From Magallana gigas (Eukaryota): a stretch of 64,000 nucleotides of DNA. Positions within the stretch are counted from its first letter, which is position 1. Every line of letters starts with the position of its first letter. Of the stretch, positions 55,048 through 64,000 are shown piece by piece. Made by a program: the position numbers and the translations under genes. The notes under the pieces were generated by a model that was not told the origin of the DNA, searched no databases, and worked only from the letters and a program-made list of their open reading frames with translations. The stretch covers positions 21,390,001-21,454,000 of the forward strand of contig NC_088855.1 of NCBI RefSeq assembly GCF_963853765.1. Reading direction: 5' to 3'.

Positions 55048-57474
55048 AACAAGAGGCCAAATAAATAAGCCGCCATTGGGGCCACATCGTTCACCTCCTT
55101 GGTAGAATAACAAAAAATTAATATTGTAAAATATTAGAATTTTTTTTTTGCAAACATTTAATCTTTGACTTTGTACCTTTATGCAATACAATTTTTACCA
55201 CAAATAAGAAAATCCTATGCAAGATATAAAAGTAAACTATTGGTAGGGGTACCCTGTTAACTTCCAATTCCCTATATTTTCGTTTTGCCCCCTACTCCCC
55301 CCCCCCCCCCCCTTCCCACTATATAAAGCGATCAAAATATTTAAGAGCATATAGGTACCTTAAAACTTACTAGTTTTTTTTTTATTTTTAAACAATTTAT
55401 TATAATATTTATTGTTCTGTATTACACCAGTTGGTGGAAAGAACTATATGGGAAGAAGATTTTATTTTATTTAAAACATTCCTATAGATGTGAAGAATAA
55501 AACTGTGCCTCAATGCACTCAATTCCTCAAATTAAAAACATTCAAAAATTTAATTGGTCTTCCCCATCATAAACGACTGTTGTTTACCTGGCGTAAACTC
55601 GTGTGACTTTTTAACCTTACTCAATGATTGATGAATACATTGGAATGAAAAGTGTCACGTGACATGTAAAAGAGTTATTATAGTCAATGTATTGACAGGC
55701 ATATCACTGTATTTTACTAAGACCCACCCATTATTTTCATCTTTATTCAAAAATAACAAATGGCTGCAAACCAGGATGATTTACGCTGTAATATTTTCTT
55801 AGGAATAGTGATAATGCCTTTATCCCCGTAACAAAATGTGGTCAGAACTATAGAAACTGTTTTAACGGTGTCGTTTTTATTAACTTGAGTCTGAAAAACT
55901 ATTAAATTTAATGTGGAATTCATATAATTCTGAATCATCGTATAAAAAGGGGGCACCAGAGAGTAGTTACAGCATATCATTTTTTGTACAAGTATTTAAC
56001 GTTTAGCGAGACATTTCTAATGTATGATCAACTAAAACTTAGAATTATAAGCAAGATACAGAGCTCACAATTTTGCTAGATTTTTAACTTGGTATTTCCT
56101 TTTCAGCATCTAAAATGTAAACAAACAAATGGCGTCATATTTGTGTACAAAGCTCTGTATCCCAGCAGGCATTTCAACGTTGTATCAACGTTGAAACAAC
56201 GTCACCCTTCAACGTTGAAATGACGTTGAAAATTAGGTTATACAGTTCAGAAGCCATCTCTATACAAAGAGTTAAATGATGAAATTTCAACCATATTTCA
56301 ACCAAATTTAGACATTGTATAAACGTCAGAAGACATTGAATCAACGTTGAAACAACGTCAGAATTCACCGTTGAATCAACGTCGGAATTTCAACGTCCAT
56401 TCAACTTTATTTTTCAATCAATTTTCAACGTCATTTCAACGTTGAAGGGTGACGTTGTTTCAACGTTGATACAACGTTGAAATGCCTGATGGGGTGCACT
56501 CAAACAAAGAGCACAATTTATTTTTCAAAATAAATCATATATATAGATATATTTATATATATCTAGCACATATTTCTGTCAGCGATTTTAACTCTGTTTA
56601 AACTGCATTGTATCAATGAACCACATTACGCAAAAGATCATACCGAATTCCCAATAGAATGAATTGTATTTTAGTACTTTGTTAATACATCAGATTTTGC
56701 TTATTTGCGCAGGTAAACAGTTTTGATTTGATACGTAAATATAACAAAAAAACAGGCGATAGTTCCCAGGTAACAAAGCATAAATAATATGAAAATGAAC
56801 GAAAATCAAAACAAGCTATAATCACACAACCGTCAAATGTGAAAATTTCAACGCATTGAAATATTTAACCTCAATTTACTTCACAAAATCGGAACCAATA
56901 TATCTTGCATGTTTCAAAGATTCTCTTCGCACGCGAACTGATGCACAGCATTTGTCAGATCGAGCCGTTTATCATTCAACATGCCTGCTTTAAACAAAGA
57001 ACCTACTTTTGCACCGTTCCGTTTTTAGAAGAATGGAATACCGAACTCGACGTTATAATCGGATCGAAAGAGGCATTTCCTTTACTATTATTTTCGTAAT
57101 AACTCAGATTTGAAACAGAATTAGCCCATAATTTTTGCAATTTATAGTCTCCTTTCCATATAAGGATTATTTATGCTTAATTACGTGGATTTTGACTCAG
57201 TAGTTCTTAAGAAGAAGATTTTTAAAAATGCACCCCTTTTTCTACAATTTCGAGGGTTTTACCGCTTTGAATAATGATCGGTCTTTCATTTCTGCAATTT
57301 ATATTTGCCTTCGCATAAGGATTCTTTGTACAAAATTTGGTTGAAATTGGTCAAGGGTTTTAGAGAAGAAGTTCAAATTGTAAAAAGTTTACAGACCGAC
57401 GGACAGACAGACGGACGACTGACAAAATGTGATCAGAATAGCTTACTTAAGCTTTCAGCCCAGGTGAGCTAAAA
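55048..57474 (-). mobile_element. HINE/Helentron-like element, or two remnants, with nested insertions
   Basis: Left end aacaagaggcc...gggccacatcgttcacct; right end gctttcagcccaggtgagctaaaa; GACA/GACG microsatellite at about 57395-57422 and a satellite-like monomer beside it. The interior is heterogeneous. Confidence 0.55.
56161..56493. mobile_element. Foldback MITE with TIRs of about 75 bp built from TCAACGTTGA palindromes
   Basis: cccagcaggcatttcaacgttgtatcaacgttgaaacaacgtcacccttcaacgttgaaatgacgttgaaaatt is mirrored at the right end. Confidence 0.88.
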
Positions 57475-59937
57475 TTGAAGTATATACCCAGTAATATCAA
57501 AATTAACATTTTCATTTTAACGCTTGTAAAAGCTAGTTATGTTCATGGATGTTTTTAAAGGTAGCTCGCGGGTTTACCTGCTTGTGAGAAAATCTACCTT
57601 GAAAATTTGTCCACGTTTCAGAGTTTTATTTCTAAAATTTATTTGAGATTCGTCTGCGCGGTACGTAATAATGATATAGTGTTTCAAATACAGTGTCATT
57701 GATAAAATCAAGCAACACAATTTCAATGAAATATATAGTAAAATGCACACCTTAGTCGAGAAACGCATTACAAAACTATGCTTCAAACTTTTATACGATT
57801 CAGACGAAATTAATCATATTCAACACAATAACAGAGCAGATAATTATGAATCAATCAATAAAAAATAATCAGTATGTGTTCTCGGCCAATTTTTGGCAAA
57901 ACAAAAAGATTTCTCAAAACCTTATATTTTCATTACGACGTTAGCCCGACGTCACCATTTCTTTAAAGTCTGAGAACCCAAAAATTGAAATGCATTTATT
58001 GACAAGACTAGCTGATTAACACATTTTAGAACATGTAAATACTAATTAGACATTATTGTGAATGTTATCAAATGCACAAATAAATGTAAGGCTTTAAAGA
58101 TACAGAAAATTGCTATTTTTGTTTTTATGAAACTGAGTCAATCAATGCAAAAGAAATTGCCAGTCAACTACTACTGACATAATAAGTTTGTAATCGTATA
58201 AAATAATTAGCTCAAGCCAAAATAATTTAAAAAATTTGATCGGTAGTTAAAATTACGTAACTTATAATTGTAAAAAAAAAAATTCGAAGTTAATGAATAC
58301 GGTTCAATTAATTTCCTTTTCTATTTTAAAACATGATTTTAAATGGAAGATCGAGTTCCAACGCACACTCATTCTTTATAGAACAAAATGTGACAGTGTA
58401 TGTGGCATCTTTAAATTTTCAGCACTTCATAATTATAAATGTCAACGCTAAAAAGATATAGAAATCTTCTTTACAAAATTCTTCTCTGCCTCTTCTTGAT
58501 TCAACTTTAGATCTTGTAAAACATTGTAATAATCGTTCCTCTTTATAATATGTATTAATGAAGCCAGACGGTTGTGACTATTTTATAGAATTTACCAACG
58601 TTCGGCTTTTCACTGTGTCGAGACGTAAATCATAACGAATTAAAATGAAAAAAACAGTAGTAAGTTTGAAAATGATATTGCATGGACTTGTTGTTCTTAA
58701 CTCAGAGTCCTTATAACGCAATATATTTACATCCACTAAGCACGGTTCCCTCTCTTTCTTACGGTAATTGGTTGTAATTCATTTCTCTACAGAAACTAAC
58801 GGGACTGAAATCTACACGATCCAGTTCTAACCAGTTTGTCGATCAGCAACCTAAGAAAAAAAAGAACACGGACTGCACGAAATAATCATGACGGTGTCAG
58901 ACTTGAATTCCCATATAGTACGACTTAGCTATTTCTTTTGATCTCAGTCTTACTTTTCTGCTATATACATTTCTTTTGTAAAAGTGAGACTGAGATCATG
59001 TACGTTAACAATGATTTAGTTACTTTTACTTACTCTTTACGATCAATTCATTTATTTGTTAAAAGAAAGATGTAATACAAACAATAAACTGCTTTCTTTG
59101 ATTATTCATTCGGGTTATGAACGAAGCAATCATTGCAGAAAGAAATCATTTAATTGTTTTTAAAAAAAATTATTTTTGGTTTACTCACATTAAAGTTAGA
59201 TCATTTCTGATCTGTTCAGGTCTTTTAACTAGTATGGGGCCAGAAATCAATTAAAGATTCGTAATCTTTCTCGAAAGAAAAAACGAAAACATATTTATTT
59301 GCAATAATTGACCCGAAATATTTCACGATCATATGATTACAAATTAATGTCTTTTTAGCTCAAGTTACAATGAGTTGTTTAATCCCAGAACTTTTTTTTA
59401 AAAGAACGTTAAACGTGTTAAAAGCTATTTTAATTGATTTTCTCGAAACGTATAGGTTCAATGGGGTTACATCCAACACATATTCAGTTACTCCCTAAAG
59501 AAGAAAGGAGTAAAGAATTTGTTTAAACTGATTTGGAAATAGCAAAACCTAATAGACCTTAAAATAGATTACAAAAATCATTGTGCGCTTTGACCTCAAA
59601 GCAAATTAGGGTATATACTACTTTTGACGCAGTGAAAATTTACGTAAAATTTCAATTTAAGGGAGAGAAAAAGATAAATGGCACTTCAATTTCTATAATA
59701 TTTATTTTTAGAACAAGATTCAAAGTAGCAAGGTAAAATAGAGCGAATTAAAAAAAAGACCCAATCATATTGCAATGCTGAAGAATTATGAGTTCATTGT
59801 TATAAAGACATAATTTTTCACTTTTTACAGTACATGTACATCATGGCTTTGTGGCGGTAAAATATAAAGTAAAATTCAACGAAAAACAAAGTAAAAACAA
59901 AACAGAACAAAAAACAAACAAATCTTTGGTATCGAGT

Positions 59938-60591
59938 CTATTTCAAAGATATTCTCTCATGTTCAAACAACGTGATTTTCCTCGCATTTTTTAAGCAGTC
60001 CGCTTCAACAAATTTTTGTTTGCAAGCTGTGAATGCATCTCTGGCCTTCACAGGTTCACCTTTTCTCCTGTATAACTCAACTAGAAATTGATAGACCTGT
60101 AAATCCGAATTAATTTCAGCTGATTTAATGAATTTATTTTCAGCGAGATTGTAACTTCCATATGACATTAACCACTGTCCTTCATATTTCAATATTGTTG
60201 TATTTTTATTGTCCGTTATGCTCTTCTCTACCATTTCCAAATAGCTCTCTTCTTGGGAATCAAACGAACGCTTTAACACGTGCATGGTACCATACCTGAA
60301 AACCTCTACATAACCTCGAGTAATAAACTGACGTGTTATTTTCATCACAAGATAATTGTATTCTTTTTGCCTAATCAAACATTTGAGTAAAAACGGAGTG
60401 TTTTGAATATGGACGTAATTCGATATTTGTGACGTAATTGATATTTCTCTGTTGCCATAGAAGGACCACACAGCCAGTCGACTTTCTTTCGAGAACTCCC
60501 TAAACTCTGTATTAATCAAGGAAAACCACGGAACATTTTGCCTCAAAACCGTATATCCTCCAGTCATGTGAATATCCCTGTCCATGAACAC
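59938..60591 (-). CDS. Intronless hypothetical protein (ORF3; 215 aa from the ATG at 60585), directly downstream of the hammerhead
   Basis: Open frame of 217 codons in AT-rich DNA, co-directional with the RT. No recognisable domain. Confidence 0.55.
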   Translation of the reverse strand: MFMDRDIHMTGGYTVLRQNVPWFSLINTEFREFSKESRLAVWSFYGNREISITSQISNYVHIQNTPFLLKCLIRQKEYNYLVMKITRQFITRGYVEVFRYGTMHVLKRSFDSQEESYLEMVEKSITDNKNTTILKYEGQWLMSYGSYNLAENKFIKSAEINSDLQVYQFLVELYRRKGEPVKARDAFTACKQKFVEADCLKNARKITLFEHERISLK

Positions 60592-60659
60592 ACCCGTGAC
60601 GTCACTTTGTTTTGAAAAAAGACGACATCAATCAACCAAACTTGTTGTAAATTTATTAA

Positions 60660-60790
60660 GACCCGACACTCTAGACCACATTATGAGTACACGTTATACA
60701 CTGATATTGTTATTATGGATGCATAGAGTGTTTCGGCGGTTTTTGTAAGAGTTATGGTTTTAACTCTTAAGGCCCGCCTCATCAGGGGTC
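60660..60790 (-). ncRNA. Type I hammerhead ribozyme, predicted GUC cleavage between 60665 and 60664
   Basis: Minus strand: GACCC-CTGATGA-GGCGG[..TAAGAGTTA/TAACTCTTA..]CCGCC-GAAA-CACTCTA[50 nt]TAGAGTG-TC-GGGTC. All core nucleotides and all three stems are present. Confidence 0.92.
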
Positions 60791-62742
60791 TACCTATTAT
60801 GATTTTCACATTTTTGTAATCGTGATTGAATTATCATTTCGCCGATATTCTTGTGTTTACTGTAGGCGATTATAGGTTCATTGGTAAATAGTTCTTTGCA
60901 TATTTCATCATTTTTAAGGACATTCCAGTATTTCAGGATGCGCTTTTTGAGACCCTTCAAGTGTGGGTTGTACTTGGTTATCATGACATTTGGTGGTCGT
61001 TGTTTGCATTTTATATCTGTTTTCACCAAGTATTTTTTTCTATTTGTGTTTTCCATTGTACGCACAGTGGGATCTATTTCCTTATCAGAGTAACCTCTCT
61101 TTGAAAGGTGTGTCTTGAAATCCGTTAGAATTGTAGATAGAATGCAAGGATTACTGGTATTCCTTGTATGTCTGATGCATTCGCCTTTTATGAACCCTTT
61201 AAAGACAGAAGGGCTGTGAGTGCTTTTTCTGTGTAGATATTGAAAATTGTTTGTTGGTTTTATATATGATTTAATATCAAGTATGTTATTTTCCTGAAAC
61301 CTCACGCCTTTGTATATAGTAGTGTCCAGAAAATTGACGCTTTTTTCTGAGATTTCATACGTGAATTTCAGGTGTTCGTGACATGTATTGCCGATGTCAA
61401 AAAATTCTAGAATTTCATTTTGTGTGCCGTTAAAGGCTATAAAACCATCGTCTCTAAATCGCCCGTGGTAAAGAACTTGATTGGCGAGTTTGAATTTTGA
61501 CATTATATAGTTGGTGATTTGATACATTCTTGTATCTGAAATTTCTGGAGATGGTATTGCACCCATACTGCATCCTATAATTTGTTTAAAGTATTTTCCA
61601 TTGAACTCAAAGTAATTGTTTTCCAAGACGCATTTCAATAAGAAGATAAGATCTTCGCTCTCTGGATAAGGAATGTCGATTTGTGGTTTGTTTGCGTTTT
61701 TGTAAGTTTCATTGACGGCGCTGAGTAATTCGCCGAATTCCATGTTGGTATACATACTAGTTACATCATATGTAATTAGTAACACCTCTGCTGGAAGTTC
61801 GAGAGTCTCAATTTTATTGATAAAATCGGCGGTGTCCTTAATATAAGTTGATTGATTTTGTACTATGGGAATGAGAAAGTAATCGCAATATGCGCCGATT
61901 TTCCGTGTTGGCGTATCACACTGTGAAATAATCGGGCGGCCAGGTGGTAATTGTCTGATGCTGCATAGGCCGTTTTGAAGGGCATATCGGACTTCATCTT
62001 TGATTTTGTGTATTTTAGGGAGCAAGTATAAATGACCGCATTTAAGCGATGGTTTGTTATCGCAGAGATAACGATACGTTTCCTTATCTATTGAGCCCTT
62101 AGAGTACATTTGCGTTACTCTATTTTGTATGATATGATGCAAGTTCTGTAGATCTGGTTTATCAACTTGCATGTAATGTTTTGATTTGAGTTGGCGCATG
62201 GCCTCTGCAATATATTGGTCTTTGTCCATAATAACAATTGTATTGCTTTTGTCCGCTTTTTTGATAACAATATTGTTATTGTTTCTCAGAGACGTCAGTG
62301 CTTCTCTTTCAAGCTTAGACGTATTATTTTGAATTTTCTTGATTGGAATAGATGACAATTCTAATTTAGTTTTGTCGATGTAATCCTCTAATGCATAACA
62401 TGTGAATGAGGGGTTGTAACCAGACGGTTTTCTGAATGGGTGAATTGGAAGATTTTCCCCTTTGTCAAAATGATACTTGCATCGGAGTTTTCTAGCAAAC
62501 TCGTCAAAGTCGTTCAAGATGACTTTTTTAGTGTTGCTGTTTTGTGGAGTCGGTATAAATTTTAAACCTTTACTGAGCACAGAATACTCGTGTTGGTTGA
62601 CTTTGTACTTAGATAGATTGAGTACATACTTCTGAGAGTTGTTCTCGTTATTTTTGTATGTATTTTTAAATTGCATTAGATTAGATTGGGATCTACGGTA
62701 GTTTTTTCTGGTTTTGTTCCGTTTATTAAAACGTCTTGCCAT
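60790..62742 (-). CDS. Penelope-like reverse transcriptase (650 aa from the first ATG) with no C-terminal GIY-YIG domain
   Basis: VLNLS..LSKGLKFIPTP, IKKADKSNTIVIMDK, YLLPKIHK, PGRPIIS, YDVTSMYTN, GCSMGAIPSP, RFRDDGF, FLDTTIY, KPTNNFQYL..STHS, PIIAYSKHKNIGEMIIQSRL, then a stop 8 codons later. Confidence 0.92.
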   Translation of the reverse strand: MARRFNKRNKTRKNYRRSQSNLMQFKNTYKNNENNSQKYVLNLSKYKVNQHEYSVLSKGLKFIPTPQNSNTKKVILNDFDEFARKLRCKYHFDKGENLPIHPFRKPSGYNPSFTCYALEDYIDKTKLELSSIPIKKIQNNTSKLEREALTSLRNNNNIVIKKADKSNTIVIMDKDQYIAEAMRQLKSKHYMQVDKPDLQNLHHIIQNRVTQMYSKGSIDKETYRYLCDNKPSLKCGHLYLLPKIHKIKDEVRYALQNGLCSIRQLPPGRPIISQCDTPTRKIGAYCDYFLIPIVQNQSTYIKDTADFINKIETLELPAEVLLITYDVTSMYTNMEFGELLSAVNETYKNANKPQIDIPYPESEDLIFLLKCVLENNYFEFNGKYFKQIIGCSMGAIPSPEISDTRMYQITNYIMSKFKLANQVLYHGRFRDDGFIAFNGTQNEILEFFDIGNTCHEHLKFTYEISEKSVNFLDTTIYKGVRFQENNILDIKSYIKPTNNFQYLHRKSTHSPSVFKGFIKGECIRHTRNTSNPCILSTILTDFKTHLSKRGYSDKEIDPTVRTMENTNRKKYLVKTDIKCKQRPPNVMITKYNPHLKGLKKRILKYWNVLKNDEICKELFTNEPIIAYSKHKNIGEMIIQSRLQKCENHNR

Positions 62743-63227
62743 TTTAATAAAGAATACCCAGAAATGTAGTAGATCTTTGTTACTTATGAGAATCAAAGGT
62801 TCCGTCTACTAAACGACTGGTCGATGTAGTAGAGGAAAGTAACTGGTTTGTTAAAATCCTTGGGAAGACATCAGAGAAGATAGCACGTGGCTTCAAACTA
62901 CGCCCCGTTTGAAACTGAGGCTAATACACCTAAATAACCACAACCCAAGTTGTGTAAACAATCCAAAGATAATGAATAAAAACAAATAATGCAAGTATAA
63001 TGGTATATTCTGGTATCACACGATATATAAACAATACAGTAGTATTATAATCTTTAACTAACAAAGTTAGTTATTAATTTTATGCATGTTCTTGATTATG
63101 AGGGTTTAAAATTTCCAATCATAGAATATTGTGCATCACATTGTCACAAAAACGCTATATTCATTTCGGGTAGAGTGTTTCCAGAAATTTTGATGTGAAC
63201 ACCCCGTTGGTCAGAACATTATAAGTG

Positions 63228-63935
63228 TCAATATGGCCTGCCTCTTAGTTGTTGTCTGCGTGGTCCAGGTCTACGGAAGGGTCTTCCGCGTGGTCTTTTA
63301 GACTGGTCCCGCGTTTGGGAGTTAGATTGGGTTGCTGTTGCCAACCTGCTCCTGAATTCCTGGATTTCCGATATCTGTTCTTGGTTGATTTTGGTAATGT
63401 TTTCGTCAAAGTGACGCTTTTCAATTTCAAAATCAACAGACTGGCGCCTTACTGCTTGGAGAGTTTGATTACGGATTTGGTTACTCTCCATTTCCTTGGT
63501 TTTGATTTCGGCCTCCACATAGTCAAGGACTAATTGGGCTGTTTGTTTATTCTGGGATTCGGCCAAGTCTCGCCAGAATTTTTCAAACTTCTCATTTCCT
63601 TCGCCGTCCAAGTTTAACGCACAGTAAGACCGGGTATGAAACCAAGTCGGAAATTTTCCTGTCTGGATGCCATAGCGTAAGCTTTCTTTCCTCTTTGCCA
63701 GGGTCAGGCGGTTTTGAAGTGTTTTGCGAATTTCTCCCAGTCCTTCAGAAATTATAGTAGATGAATTATCACTTCCCTCTGGAAGGTTGATCGTCAGATC
63801 AAGGTCTGGGATTGCGAATAAGGCTTCCTGGTTTGATGGAACCAAATCATCATCCATTTTGCTTTCATAACTGTTCTGCATATTACTAGTATTAGACTGT
63901 TTCTTAAGAGAGAGTCTGTTGAATCTGTGGAACAT
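63228..63935 (-). CDS. ORF1 of the Penelope-like element (235 aa; probable coiled coil, Arg-rich C-terminus)
   Basis: Intact ORF upstream of and co-directional with the RT. Glu/Gln/Lys-rich helical middle and an RPRGRPFRRPGPRRQQLRGRPY tail. Confidence 0.75.
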   Translation of the reverse strand: MFHRFNRLSLKKQSNTSNMQNSYESKMDDDLVPSNQEALFAIPDLDLTINLPEGSDNSSTIISEGLGEIRKTLQNRLTLAKRKESLRYGIQTGKFPTWFHTRSYCALNLDGEGNEKFEKFWRDLAESQNKQTAQLVLDYVEAEIKTKEMESNQIRNQTLQAVRRQSVDFEIEKRHFDENITKINQEQISEIQEFRSRLATATQSNSQTRDQSKRPRGRPFRRPGPRRQQLRGRPY

Positions 63936-64000
63936 ATTATAGGAATGAGATCGTGAAGTTGGTACACTGCCTTATAGTTTGTCGTAAGGAACATATTTTA

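What the first reader, a model, noticed from the sequence alone, without database searches (positions are those of the whole stretch)
59938..64000. Intact three-ORF Penelope-like retroelement whose RT has no endonuclease
Seen: three uninterrupted minus-strand ORFs (235, 650 and about 215 aa). The RT has all PLE motifs and runs to PIIAY..NIGEMIIQSRL, where endonuclease-bearing PLEs continue into a Cys-rich linker and a GIY-YIG domain. Here it stops, and the stop codon is directly followed by a hammerhead rather than a decayed endonuclease. There is no N-terminal GIY-YIG either. Known: endonuclease-less PLEs (Athena, Coprina) and multi-ORF, hammerhead-bearing Terminons are described mainly from bdelloid rotifers, fungi and some other lineages, often at telomeres. 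Inference: this may be an uncharacterised, recently active endonuclease-less PLE architecture in a bivalve, inserted among ordinary genes, which leaves open how it integrates.
Basis: partly seen in the sequence, partly recalled or inferred. Interest (0 to 1): 0.82.

Follow-up and report, generated by a model that had tools for sequence, protein, structure and literature searches.

The report
Endonuclease-free Penelope retroelement with working hammerhead
This is a young, intact, two-gene Penelope-like jumping element in an oyster genome that has no DNA-cutting domain yet sits inside chromosomes. RNA reads support that it cuts its own RNA with a full hammerhead ribozyme, and the supposed third gene is only a duplicated tail of a neighbouring host gene.

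Summary
The three ORFs, the endonuclease-free RT and the hammerhead (HHR) are real, but the element has two ORFs, not three.

**Element.** The repeat unit is 3,623 bp. It ends at window 60609 and starts 231 bp beyond the window. It holds ORF1 (235 aa, helical with a basic tail), a 650-aa RT with all catalytic motifs, a canonical type I HHR overlapping the RT stop, and a conserved 56-nt tail.

**"ORF3".** It is the last 213 codons of a host Glyco_transf_22 gene. It lies in a 1,639-bp segment duplicated on both sides of the insertion.

**Copies.** Three arrays (C3, C7, C1) each carry two full intact units plus 5'-truncated copies, 97.7-100% identical.

**No endonuclease.** No GIY-YIG was found in any frame. 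The RT falls in a 101-member ~645-aa clade with 0 endonuclease carriers, against 33 of 41 in the sister group, so it is not a deletion derivative. Named members are all bivalves.

**HHR.** The core is invariant, with compensatory changes in 10 of 18 helix pairs. Eleven template-switch-tagged RNA reads start exactly at the predicted cleavage site.

**Location.** No telomeric repeats were found and insertions are interstitial.

**Open.** The integration route and placement among named Penelope-like clades remain open.

The parts
60609..64000 (-). Last full repeat unit of the Penelope-like element. It is 3,623 bp in all. Its first 231 bp lie beyond the window end, at G000:C3:21454001-21454231.
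   Evidence: Self-comparison of C3:21448000-21461835 gives an 836-bp 5'-truncated copy plus two full units, all 100% identical. The same unit recurs at C1:34322810-34330973 (97.7%) and C7:14282945-14294363 (99.7%).
63228..63935 (-). ORF1, 235 aa. Disordered acidic N-terminus, three long helices, and an Arg/Gly/Pro-rich basic C-terminal tail.
   Evidence: ORF seen. Six intact copies lie in three arrays, and sister families in the same genome have ORF1 at 41-46% identity. It is 39% identical to the ORF upstream of the Pinctada RT. AlphaFold2 gives mean pLDDT 70.6 with helices 56-92, 114-165 and 169-203. No Pfam or PDB fold match.
62743..63227 (-). 485-nt spacer between ORF1 and the RT ORF.
   Evidence: It holds no ORF of 60 aa or more on the element strand. 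The only Rfam match is sub-threshold (SCARNA7, 27 bits against a gathering score of 65) and is judged noise.
60790..62742 (-). RT ORF, 650 aa, without an endonuclease domain.
   Evidence: Homologues carry DUF8422 + RVT_1 + HTH_animal. The catalytic D326 and D431-D432, plus the DK, LPKxHK, RPI, FLD and KPT..YL..S.H motifs, are conserved across 142 relatives. It falls in an endonuclease-free clade.
60659..60791 (-). Type I hammerhead ribozyme, 133 nt. Helix I is 60791-60786 paired with 60664-60659. The CUGAUGA core is 60785-60779. Helix II is 5 bp plus an extension. GAAA follows, then an 8-bp helix III with a ~50-nt loop. C17 is at 60665.
   Evidence: The MFE fold equals the hammerhead junction. 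The core is invariant in diverged families of this genome and in Pinctada, Mytilus and an unnamed host, with compensatory changes in 10 of 18 pairs. Rfam models miss it, probably because of the long loops (my inference).
60664..60665 (-). Self-cleavage site, between C17 (60665) and G (60664).
   Evidence: In RNA run X24, 11 reads end at 60664 and continue with CCCATGTACTCTGCGTTGATACCACTGCTT. From my own knowledge of the chemistry, this is the reverse complement of the SMART template-switch oligo. It marks an RNA 5' end exactly at 60664 (table 7).
60609..60664 (-). 56-nt 3' tail after the cleavage site. It holds AATAAA (60657-60652) and ends ...TTTTTTCAAAAC.
   Evidence: The motif AAGTYTGGYTGATTGATGT is conserved in families with ~70% nucleotide identity over the RT region and in Pinctada. 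Every insertion ends within a few bases of it. It is repeated three times with a 39-bp period in L038. In L012 an extra tail copy starts exactly at GGGTC and ends in an A run.
58973..60611 (-). Host segment 'A' (1,639 bp), not part of the element. It is duplicated at 100% identity on the other side of the array (C3:21458697-21460335). It contains 'ORF3' (59938-60591), the last 213 codons of a Glyco_transf_22 gene, plus ~965 bp of 3' flank.
   Evidence: Seen. Pfam PF03901 matches at E = 4.9e-21. The 3' junction has a 3-nt AAC overlap (60609-60611). The 5' junction has a 6-nt filler, CCTTTT.

Best explanation
**What it is.** A recently inserted tandem array of a low-copy, apparently autonomous Penelope-like retroelement (PLE) from a large lineage that has no endonuclease (EN-) and whose named members are all bivalves. 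Each 3.6-kb unit encodes a helical, basic-tailed ORF1 and a telomerase-like RT. ORF1 is inferred to be an RNA-binding or chaperone, Gag-like protein. After the RT come a full type I hammerhead and a conserved 56-nt tail with a poly(A) signal.

**Shown**
- RNA is made from the element strand.
- Transcripts cross unit junctions.
- RNA 5' ends lie exactly at the hammerhead cleavage site.

**Inferred**
- Read-through transcripts of tandem units are cut by the ribozyme into unit-length RNAs carrying the tail at their 5' end.
- The RT recognises the conserved tail and starts cDNA synthesis at its end, on any available DNA 3'-OH.
- It jumps between templates. This gives 5'-truncated, tandem and inverted copies.
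- Because there is no endonuclease of its own, priming uses pre-existing breaks or nicks, or possibly cuts made in trans by co-resident EN+ PLEs. This would explain the lack of a target consensus and the microhomology and filler at the junctions. It would also explain the unusual 1.6-kb target duplication, which left the neighbouring GT22 gene intact and created the false 'ORF3'.
For: **Structure**
- Unit and arrays.
- Ends of the element.
- ORF3 is a host gene fragment.

**No endonuclease**
- Pfam finds no GIY-YIG in the ORFs.
- A custom linker+GIY-YIG HMM gives a best E of 0.29 in six frames of 13.8 kb here plus 15 related loci. The same HMM hits 56 control proteins.

**Lineage**
- 2,027 homologue clusters, mostly ~645 aa, including Saccostrea, Pinctada, Mytilus and Argopecten.
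- EN+ relatives appear only at 31-38% identity.
- The tree places the query in a 101-row clade (SH-aLRT 94) with 0 EN carriers, against 33 of 41 outside it.
- RT motifs are intact.

**Hammerhead**
- Fold; conservation and covariation.
- Template-switch-tagged 5' ends at 60664, tandem-junction reads, and minus-sense coverage.

**Recent activity**
- 100% identical units, 97.7-99.7% identity between arrays, and six copies with both ORFs intact.

**Location**
- No telomeric repeats. Copies lie 4-63 Mb inside contigs; the six whose lengths were returned span 50-76 Mb.

**Possible trans endonuclease**
- Intact EN+ PLE ORFs coexist in the genome.
Against: **RT domain call.** The local Pfam copy gives no RVT_1 hit for this RT even at E <= 10. 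The RT assignment rests on homologues and motifs.

**Placement.** No named PLE reference sequences (Athena, Coprina, Neptune and others) could be brought in, and the tree is unrooted. Placement among named clades, and whether the EN-free state is ancestral or a loss, is therefore open.

**Cleavage evidence.** It comes from one run: 11 reads at 95% identity or better, which could derive from any copy of the family.

**Covariation.** My helix parser selects for pairing, which inflates the apparent covariation.

**The duplication.** The 1,639-bp duplication and the element-flank junction were not confirmed independently.
- Contigs of DNA runs X1 and X5 run from segment A straight into the intact gene.
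- Depth over A is about equal to depth over the next flank: 6.5 against 5.2-5.6 in X1, and 13.4-14.3 against 13.9 in X5.
- The insertion may therefore be private or heterozygous, or the duplication may be an assembly error.

**Mechanism.** The integration mechanism and the role of ORF1 are inference only.
Confidence: 0.8

Rival explanations
1. The element cannot integrate on its own. It is mobilised by the GIY-YIG endonuclease of endonuclease-bearing (EN+) PLEs living in the same genome. In this view its own RT copies its RNA at nicks made in trans.
For: - The genome holds many EN+ PLE ORFs of 800-1,000 aa without stops.
- Insertion sites are AT-rich, as reported for PLE endonucleases (PMC11167929).
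- The inverted plus direct copies in the C7 array resemble canonical EN+ PLE insertions (PMC8557442).
Against: - The EN+ relatives share only about 29-37% identity with this RT.
- In PLEs the endonuclease is fused to the RT that binds its own RNA.
- In Adineta vaga no preferential co-mobilisation of EN- PLEs by EN+ PLEs was found (PMC3846280).
- No short, regular target-site duplications were seen at the junctions I could read.
- The C3 insertion has a 1.6-kb duplication, whereas 8-10 bp is reported for EN+ PLEs (PMC3846280).
Confidence: 0.25
2. One reading: a three-ORF, Terminon- or Athena-like composite in which the 215-aa ORF downstream of the hammerhead is an element gene.
For: - Three open frames lie on one strand in close succession.
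- Athena-type EN- PLEs and Terminons do carry extra ORFs and hammerheads (PMC8557442).
Against: - Every other copy ends at unit position 3619-3623, before ORF3.
- The ORF3 segment occurs only twice in the genome, both times at this locus.
- In the other copy it is the in-frame C-terminus of a Glyco_transf_22 ORF of 694-718 aa, PF03901 at E = 4.9e-21.
Confidence: 0.02
3. A recent deletion derivative of an EN+ family. In this view the RT stop is a secondary truncation and the hammerhead merely abuts it.
For: Loss of the endonuclease inside EN+ clades is documented (Chlamys PLE-X; the Neptune-like MjPLE01; PMC8557442).
Against: - The stop lies at the same place in ~645-aa homologues down to about 33% identity, in several bivalve orders.
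- 0 of 101 clade members carry the endonuclease.
- There is no decayed endonuclease in any frame.
- Only 181 bp lie between the stop and the unit end, and the hammerhead and tail fill them.
Confidence: 0.03
4. The local structure is partly an assembly artefact. This would cover the identical tandem units and the 1,639-bp flanking duplication, for example haplotypes stacked at a heterozygous insertion.
For: - All repeats are 100% identical.
- DNA contigs of X1 and X5 pass from segment A into the intact gene without a break.
- Segment A shows no twofold depth.
Against: - Two other arrays, on C1 and C7, also hold 5'-truncated copies plus two full units.
- RNA reads cross the unit junction.
- The 5' junction (end of A + CCTTTT + unit position 2788) is a specific novel joint, typical of retroelement 5' ends, and not what stacked haplotypes would give.
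Confidence: 0.15

Closest known systems
Endonuclease-deficient PLEs: Athena (bdelloid rotifers) and Coprina (fungi, protists, plants)
   Same: - An RT-only ORF without GIY-YIG.
- An upstream ORF1 with coiled-coil character, as drawn for PLE types with an ORF1 (legend of fig. 1, PMC8557442); that Athena is the one is my recollection.
- A hammerhead near the 3' end.
- Fungal and protist EN- PLEs have type I hammerheads with a large helix III that work as monomers (PMC4209133), like the one here.
   Different: - Those elements carry short reverse-complement telomeric repeats at the 3' end and sit at or near telomeres.
- This one has none and is interstitial.
- The hosts with a name are all bivalves.
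- RT relationship to Athena or Coprina could not be tested, because no reference sequences were available.
Neptune / Nematis EN+ PLEs, and the Neptune-like EN- MjPLE01 of kuruma shrimp (cited in PMC8557442)
   Same: - The nearest EN+ relatives of this RT (31-38% identity) all carry the C-x4-5-C-x2-C linker ahead of GIY-YIG. The literature gives this as the mark of Neptune and Nematis.
- MjPLE01 is a precedent for an interstitial EN- animal PLE near Neptune.
   Different: - This element has neither linker nor endonuclease.
- It belongs to a large, deep clade (members down to about 33% identity), not a single family.
- It has a separate ORF1.
- It carries a full-length rather than a minimal hammerhead.
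- Identity with MjPLE01 was not testable.
Canonical Penelope/Poseidon PLEs (e.g. PAc of Anolis, PMC11167929)
   Same: - Partial-tandem arrays that form pseudo-LTRs.
- 5' truncation and inverted 5'-truncated copies.
- A 30-40-bp 'tail'.
- A hammerhead in the repeat region.
- Shared RT motif set.
   Different: - Those have a single ORF with a C-terminal GIY-YIG.
- Their hammerheads are minimal, lack a stable helix III and are thought to act as dimers.
- Short target duplications of 8-10 bp are reported for EN+ PLEs of the rotifer Adineta vaga (PMC3846280).
Metazoan non-LTR retrozymes (PMC7229834)
   Same: - A type I hammerhead with a real helix III.
- Tandem genomic units.
- RNA processed at the ribozyme site.
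- Presence in bivalves.
   Different: - Retrozymes are 170-400-nt non-coding units that accumulate as circular RNA.
- This unit is 3.6 kb and encodes its own RT.
- RNA circles were not tested.
- Only 20 copies of this hammerhead's 17-mer exist in the genome, and 17 of them lie in mapped copies or partial copies of the element; the other three were not examined.
Terminons (giant Athena-based composites)
   Same: An EN- PLE-type RT with hammerheads.
   Different: Terminons are giant, multi-gene and telomeric. This unit is 3.6 kb with two ORFs and lies inside a chromosome.

Membership tests
Penelope-like elements (PLE) | RT with the PLE motif set: an N-terminal DKG-type motif, LPKxHK, RPI, catalytic D and DD, FLD, and the thumb motif KPT..YL..S.H. 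| tested here: met
   All are present in the query and 86-100% conserved across 142 relatives, including EN+ PLEs. Homologues carry DUF8422 + RVT_1 + HTH_animal. Caveat: the local Pfam gave no RVT_1 hit for this protein itself.
Penelope-like elements (PLE) | Partial-tandem insertions with a 5'-truncated upstream copy (pseudo-LTR), often with an inverted 5'-truncated copy. | tested here: met
   C3: 836-bp partial + 2 full units. C1: 911-bp partial + 2 full. C7: inverted 662 bp + 1,570-bp partial + 2 full + 1,936-bp partial.
Penelope-like elements (PLE) | Hammerhead ribozyme motif in the terminal repeat region. | tested here: met
   Deep members of the same RT clade carry the minimal palindromic-helix-III form typical of PLEs (L034, L037).
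Canonical EN+ PLE | GIY-YIG endonuclease fused to the RT, C-terminal or N-terminal. | tested here: not met
   Pfam scans. Six-frame custom HMM, best E = 0.29, with 56 positive controls.
EN- PLE (Athena / Coprina) | No endonuclease domain. | tested here: met
EN- PLE (Athena / Coprina) | Short reverse-complement telomeric repeats at the 3' end, and location at or near telomeres. | tested here: not met
   The unit ends ...TTTTTTCAAAAC. No (TTAGGG)2 on either strand in the window or in 51 loci. Copies lie 4-63 Mb inside contigs; the six whose lengths were returned span 50-76 Mb.
EN- PLE (Athena / Coprina) | RT groups with Athena or Coprina reference sequences. | not testable with these tools
   No named reference sequences could be fetched. 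The tree contains only unnamed database proteins.
Neptune / Nematis | CX2-5CxxC Zn-finger-like linker between the RT and GIY-YIG. | tested here: not met
   Absent here. It is present in all 27 nearest EN+ relatives inspected, so the affinity is by neighbourhood only.
Terminon | Giant, multi-ORF composite with an Athena RT, at telomeres. | tested here: not met
   3,623-bp unit with two ORFs. The third ORF is host DNA.
Type I hammerhead ribozyme | Conserved core (CUGANGA ... GAAA ... UH cleavage site) enclosed by three helices, with helix I open. | tested here: met
   The MFE structure equals that junction. The core is invariant in 11 variants, and 10 of 18 pairs show compensatory changes. The Rfam models did not report it.
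Type I hammerhead ribozyme | Self-cleavage 3' of position 17. | tested here: met
   11 template-switch-tagged RNA 5' ends lie exactly at 60664 in run X24. This comes from one run, and in vitro cleavage was not tested.
Non-LTR retrozyme | Small (170-400 nt), non-coding tandem unit expressed as circular RNA. | tested here: not met
   The unit is 3.6 kb and coding. RNA circularity cannot be seen with these reads.

The most novel reading that the evidence does not exclude
These elements may form an old, diversified clade of endonuclease-free PLEs, whose named members are all bivalves, that remain active inside chromosomes. In this reading they replicate through hammerhead-delimited, unit-length (possibly circular) RNAs, making them RT-encoding 'autonomous retrozymes'. 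They would integrate without any endonuclease by priming on chance DNA ends, sometimes with kilobase-scale target duplications that copy parts of host genes. If so, they would be the missing RT source for invertebrate retrozymes. They would also be a living model of how telomerase-like RTs use free 3' ends away from telomeres.
Probability: 0.25. Interest if true: 0.8.

Novelty: new variant of a known kind. Interest (0 to 1): 0.62.

Why it matters
Endonuclease-free PLEs are described as generally restricted to chromosome ends, where they anneal to telomeric overhangs. Here a whole, species-rich lineage lacks the endonuclease, lacks telomeric repeats, and still shows very young, intact, interstitial insertions. 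That makes the question of how a telomerase-like RT finds a primer inside a chromosome directly testable.

It also supplies something missing for animal PLEs, whose ribozymes are reported as minimal, weak in vitro and of unknown role. This element has a full hammerhead, and RNA ends mapped in vivo lie exactly at its cleavage site.

On the practical side, the case shows how such insertions create false 'element ORFs' by duplicating host gene tails, and how they leave hundreds of unnamed 'hypothetical proteins' in bivalve annotations.

Tried and rejected
- **Rfam.** A scan of 56000-64000 at E <= 1 found no hammerhead model, only sub-threshold snoRNA-like noise. The motif was found by eye, fold and regex instead.
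- **Pfam on the RT.** No hit even at E <= 10. The local library seems to lack DUF8422 and HTH_animal, which are precomputed on the homologues.
- **Taxon names.** The listing of cluster members on 10 deep or EN+ relatives returned none, so the range beyond bivalves stays unknown. The ESM Atlas gave only generic PLE-type clusters from rotifers, chordates and cnidarians.
- **Long flank duplications.** I searched 13 other copies and found none. The only hit was a possible 34-bp repeat at the complex L012 locus. The C7 and C1 arrays also have none.
- **Short retrozyme-like arrays sharing this hammerhead.** The candidate 426-bp spacing at C1:17.97 Mb turned out to be inverted and tandem 5'-truncated PLE copies. 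The hammerhead 17-mer has only 20 copies.
- **ORF1 fold.** A PDB fold search gave no match at E <= 0.001, only generic helical bundles.
- **Duplication in public DNA.** Confirmation of the 1,639-bp duplication in public DNA runs was inconclusive.
- **Literature.** I found no description of this clade. The MjPLE01 paper is not in the library.
- **Named references.** A phylogeny against named references (Athena, Coprina, Neptune, Hydra, Naiad) could not be done.

Full report
**1. The observation**

The window is G000:C3:21390001-21454000. Three minus-strand ORFs are present as stated:
- 63228-63935, 235 aa.
- 60790-62796, 668 aa from TTG, or 650 aa from the ATG at 62742.
- 59938-60591, 217 aa from GTG.

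Pfam finds no GIY-YIG in any of them. Directly after the RT stop the sequence reads ...UAG ACCC CUGAUGA GGCGG...CCGCC GAAA CACUCUA...UAGAGUGUC GGGUCU.

Folded alone, 60650-60795 adopts exactly the hammerhead three-way junction. Helix I is 6 bp and open. Helix II is 5 bp plus a 9-bp extension. Helix III is 8 bp with a ~50-nt loop. The MFE is -39.5 kcal/mol, z = -3.55, and no shuffle of 200 folds as well. Rfam's models do not report it, probably because of the long loops.

**2. Limits of the element: two ORFs, not three**

A search of the whole genome with 59500-64000 shows that everything from the window end down to 60609 is repeated elsewhere. The stretch 59500-60611 matches only one other place, 9 kb away at the same locus.

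Self-comparison of C3:21448000-21461835 gives a unit of 3,623 bp. Read in element sense, the locus is:
- segment A (1,639 bp)
- CCTTTT
- an 836-bp 5'-truncated unit
- two full units
- segment A again (window 60611-58973)

All repeats are 100% identical.

In the upstream copy of A, 'ORF3' is the in-frame C-terminus of an ORF of 694 aa (ATG) to 718 aa. That ORF matches Glyco_transf_22 (Alg9-like mannosyltransferases) at E = 4.9e-21. ORF3 is therefore a duplicated host gene tail. The intact gene survives upstream of the array.

At the 3' junction the element end ...CAAAAC and the target share AAC. At the 5' junction there is a 6-nt filler.

**3. Other copies**

| Array | Identity to the unit | Content |
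|---|---|---|
| C1:34322810-34330973 | 97.7% | 911-bp partial copy + two full units, inserted in a ~435-bp satellite |
| C7:14282945-14294363 | 99.7% | inverted 662-bp 5'-truncated copy, 1,570-bp partial copy, two full units, then a 1,936-bp partial copy |

- Both ORFs are open in all six full units.
- Further copies are 5'-truncated and end within a few bases of ...CAAAAC or ...TATAAAAC.
- Their flanks are different and mostly AT-rich, one of them a (TA)n run.
- No other copy shows a long flank duplication.
- The hammerhead 17-mer occurs 20 times in the genome, so the family is low-copy and young.
- There are no telomeric repeats in the window or in any of 51 loci. Insertions lie megabases inside the chromosome-scale contigs whose lengths were returned.

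**4. The RT and the missing endonuclease**

The RT has >2,000 homologue clusters in the 90% collection. Most are ~645 aa with DUF8422 + RVT_1 + HTH_animal. They include proteins of Saccostrea, Pinctada, Mytilus and Argopecten.

In the exhaustive search, relatives with a ~150-aa C-terminal extension appear only at 31-38% identity. Eight of ten of these score for GIY-YIG in Pfam. All 27 inspected carry a C-x4-5-C-x2-C linker, which PMC8557442 gives as the mark of Neptune and Nematis.

An HMM of that linker plus endonuclease finds nothing (best E = 0.29) in six frames of the 13.8-kb locus or of 15 related loci from several hosts. The same HMM hits 56 control proteins.

In a tree of 142 RTs the query sits in a 101-row clade (SH-aLRT 94) with no endonuclease carrier, against 33 of 41 outside it. 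The catalytic Asp residues and the PLE-typical motifs are all retained.

The endonuclease-free state is therefore old and clade-wide, not a local deletion. The tree is unrooted and holds no named references. Whether the clade is sister to Neptune-like elements, nested in them, or allied to Coprina cannot be said.

**5. ORF1**

- ORF1 recurs upstream of the RT in sister families of this genome at 41-46% identity.
- It is 39% identical to the ORF upstream of the Pinctada RT.
- Several unnamed hosts have similar ORFs of 199-433 aa upstream of the RT.
- A Mytilus family has RT-only units of 2,566 bp.
- The AlphaFold2 model (pLDDT 70.6) shows a disordered N-terminus, three long helices and a disordered Arg/Gly-rich tail.
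- There is no Pfam or PDB fold match.
- A nucleic-acid-binding, Gag-like role is an inference from this composition and from ORF1 proteins of other retroelements.

**6. The hammerhead is functional**

The core (CUGAUGA, GAAA, C17) is unchanged in families of this genome with ~70% nucleotide identity over the RT region. It is also unchanged in Pinctada (61% RT identity), Mytilus (47%) and an unnamed host (39%). The helix II and III loops vary from 5 to ~150 nt.

Among 11 distinct variants, 10 of 18 helix pairs show compensatory double changes. My parser required pairing, so this overstates the case somewhat.

Two deep clade members carry the minimal, palindromic-helix-III form known from animal PLEs (L034, L037).

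RNA evidence comes from the random-primed single-cell run X24:
- Eleven reads end at 60664 and continue with the reverse complement of the SMART template-switch oligo. That identification is from my own knowledge of the chemistry. It places an RNA 5' end exactly one base after C17.
- Eight reads cross the junction between unit end and unit start.
- Nine reads join the unit end to unit position 1660.
- Coverage is almost wholly of the element strand.

At L012 an extra DNA copy of the tail begins exactly at the cleavage-site GGGTC and ends in a run of A. This suggests that the cleaved, polyadenylated 3' fragment can itself be reverse-transcribed. An AATAAA lies 6 nt after the cleavage site.

**7. 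How it most likely works**

Shown:
- The structure of the unit.
- Transcription across tandem units.
- RNA ends at the ribozyme site.
- Intact RT and ORF1.
- Absence of any endonuclease.
- Non-telomeric, non-specific insertion sites.

Inferred:
- The ribozyme cuts multimeric transcripts into unit-length RNAs that begin with the conserved tail.
- The RT recognises the tail and starts at or near its end. Internal initiation and 'tails' are documented for a canonical PLE in PMC11167929.
- Template jumps produce the partial, tandem and inverted copies.
- The primer is a DNA 3'-OH not made by the element itself.

The 3-nt microhomology, the filler, the absence of regular short target duplications and the one 1.6-kb duplication fit priming at pre-existing breaks or widely staggered nicks. 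Use of the endonuclease of the many intact EN+ PLEs in the genome is not excluded.

**8. Caveats on the locus**

Contigs of two DNA runs go from segment A straight into the intact gene. Segment A shows no doubled depth. The insertion is therefore probably private or heterozygous, or the duplication is an assembly error. The other two arrays and the RNA junction reads show that the tandem organisation itself is real.

**9. Comparison and novelty**

By RT motifs, array structure, tail and hammerhead, this is a Penelope-like element. It fails the defining features of canonical EN+ PLEs (no GIY-YIG). It also fails those of Athena and Coprina (no telomeric repeats, not terminal) and of Terminons.

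It resembles Athena in having a helical ORF1. It resembles fungal and protist EN- PLEs in having a hammerhead with a long helix III (PMC4209133). It resembles the Neptune-like EN- MjPLE01 in being an interstitial animal element (PMC8557442).

I found no paper describing this bivalve clade, its full-size hammerhead or its in vivo cleavage. TE libraries such as Repbase could not be checked.

I rate it a new variant of a known kind.

Noticed in passing
window 58973-60611 and G000:C3:21458697-21460335 (L009): A 1,639-bp perfect direct duplication of host DNA brackets the PLE array. It covers the last 213 codons of a Glyco_transf_22 gene plus ~965 bp of 3' flank. It leaves the gene intact and creates a promoterless gene-tail copy. 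This is far longer than the 8-10-bp target duplications reported for PLEs.
   Followed up: partly
L039 1828-2272 (G000:C4:47834827-47835271); also G000:C9:28174789-28175066: In other copies the helix III loop of the hammerhead is expanded into a 32-bp minisatellite (13.9 copies, 91% matches). The loop therefore tolerates large inserts.
   Followed up: partly
L038 2771-2888 (G000:C1:17971270-17971387): The 39-bp tail motif (TACGACAAGTTTGGTTGATTGATGTCGCCGTTTTTACAA) of a sister family is repeated three times in tandem at an insertion end. It lies within a complex of inverted and direct 5'-truncated copies.
   Followed up: partly
L042 ~4470-4620 and ~4885-4950 (unnamed host, ENA assembly): A related family has two hammerhead cores per 3,435-bp unit. 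In the first, the cleavage-site strand lies upstream of the core, so helix I is closed and helix III is open, a type III-like permutation. The second has GAAC in place of GAAA.
   Followed up: no
L031/L032 (Mytilus edulis OY782963.1): RT-only units of 2,566 bp sit in long head-to-tail arrays. Their hammerhead has a 5-nt helix III loop, a ~128-nt helix II insert and an extra U between A9 and G10.1.
   Followed up: partly
unit start, G000:C3:21454220-21454231 and homologous position in L038 ~3240: The first ~40 nt of the unit (..ATCAGGGACAATGTCCCACCGGCATCATCCCG..) are conserved between families with ~70% nucleotide identity over the RT region. They contain the palindrome GGGACAATGTCCC. This may be a 5' recognition or promoter element.
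   Followed up: no
window 58001-58400 and 58801-59200: These are high-copy repeats: DNA word depth runs from a few hundred to about 4,900, against about 6-14 for the unique flank. Many RNA reads have loose ends here, including a poly(A)-like end at 58282. This looks like an unrelated abundant, transcribed repeat next to the duplicated segment.
   Followed up: no
window 62572 joined to 60609 (RNA run X24): Nine RNA reads join the unit's 3' end directly to unit position 1660. This is a transcribed tandem junction with a 5'-truncated copy that matches none of the arrays I mapped.
   Followed up: no
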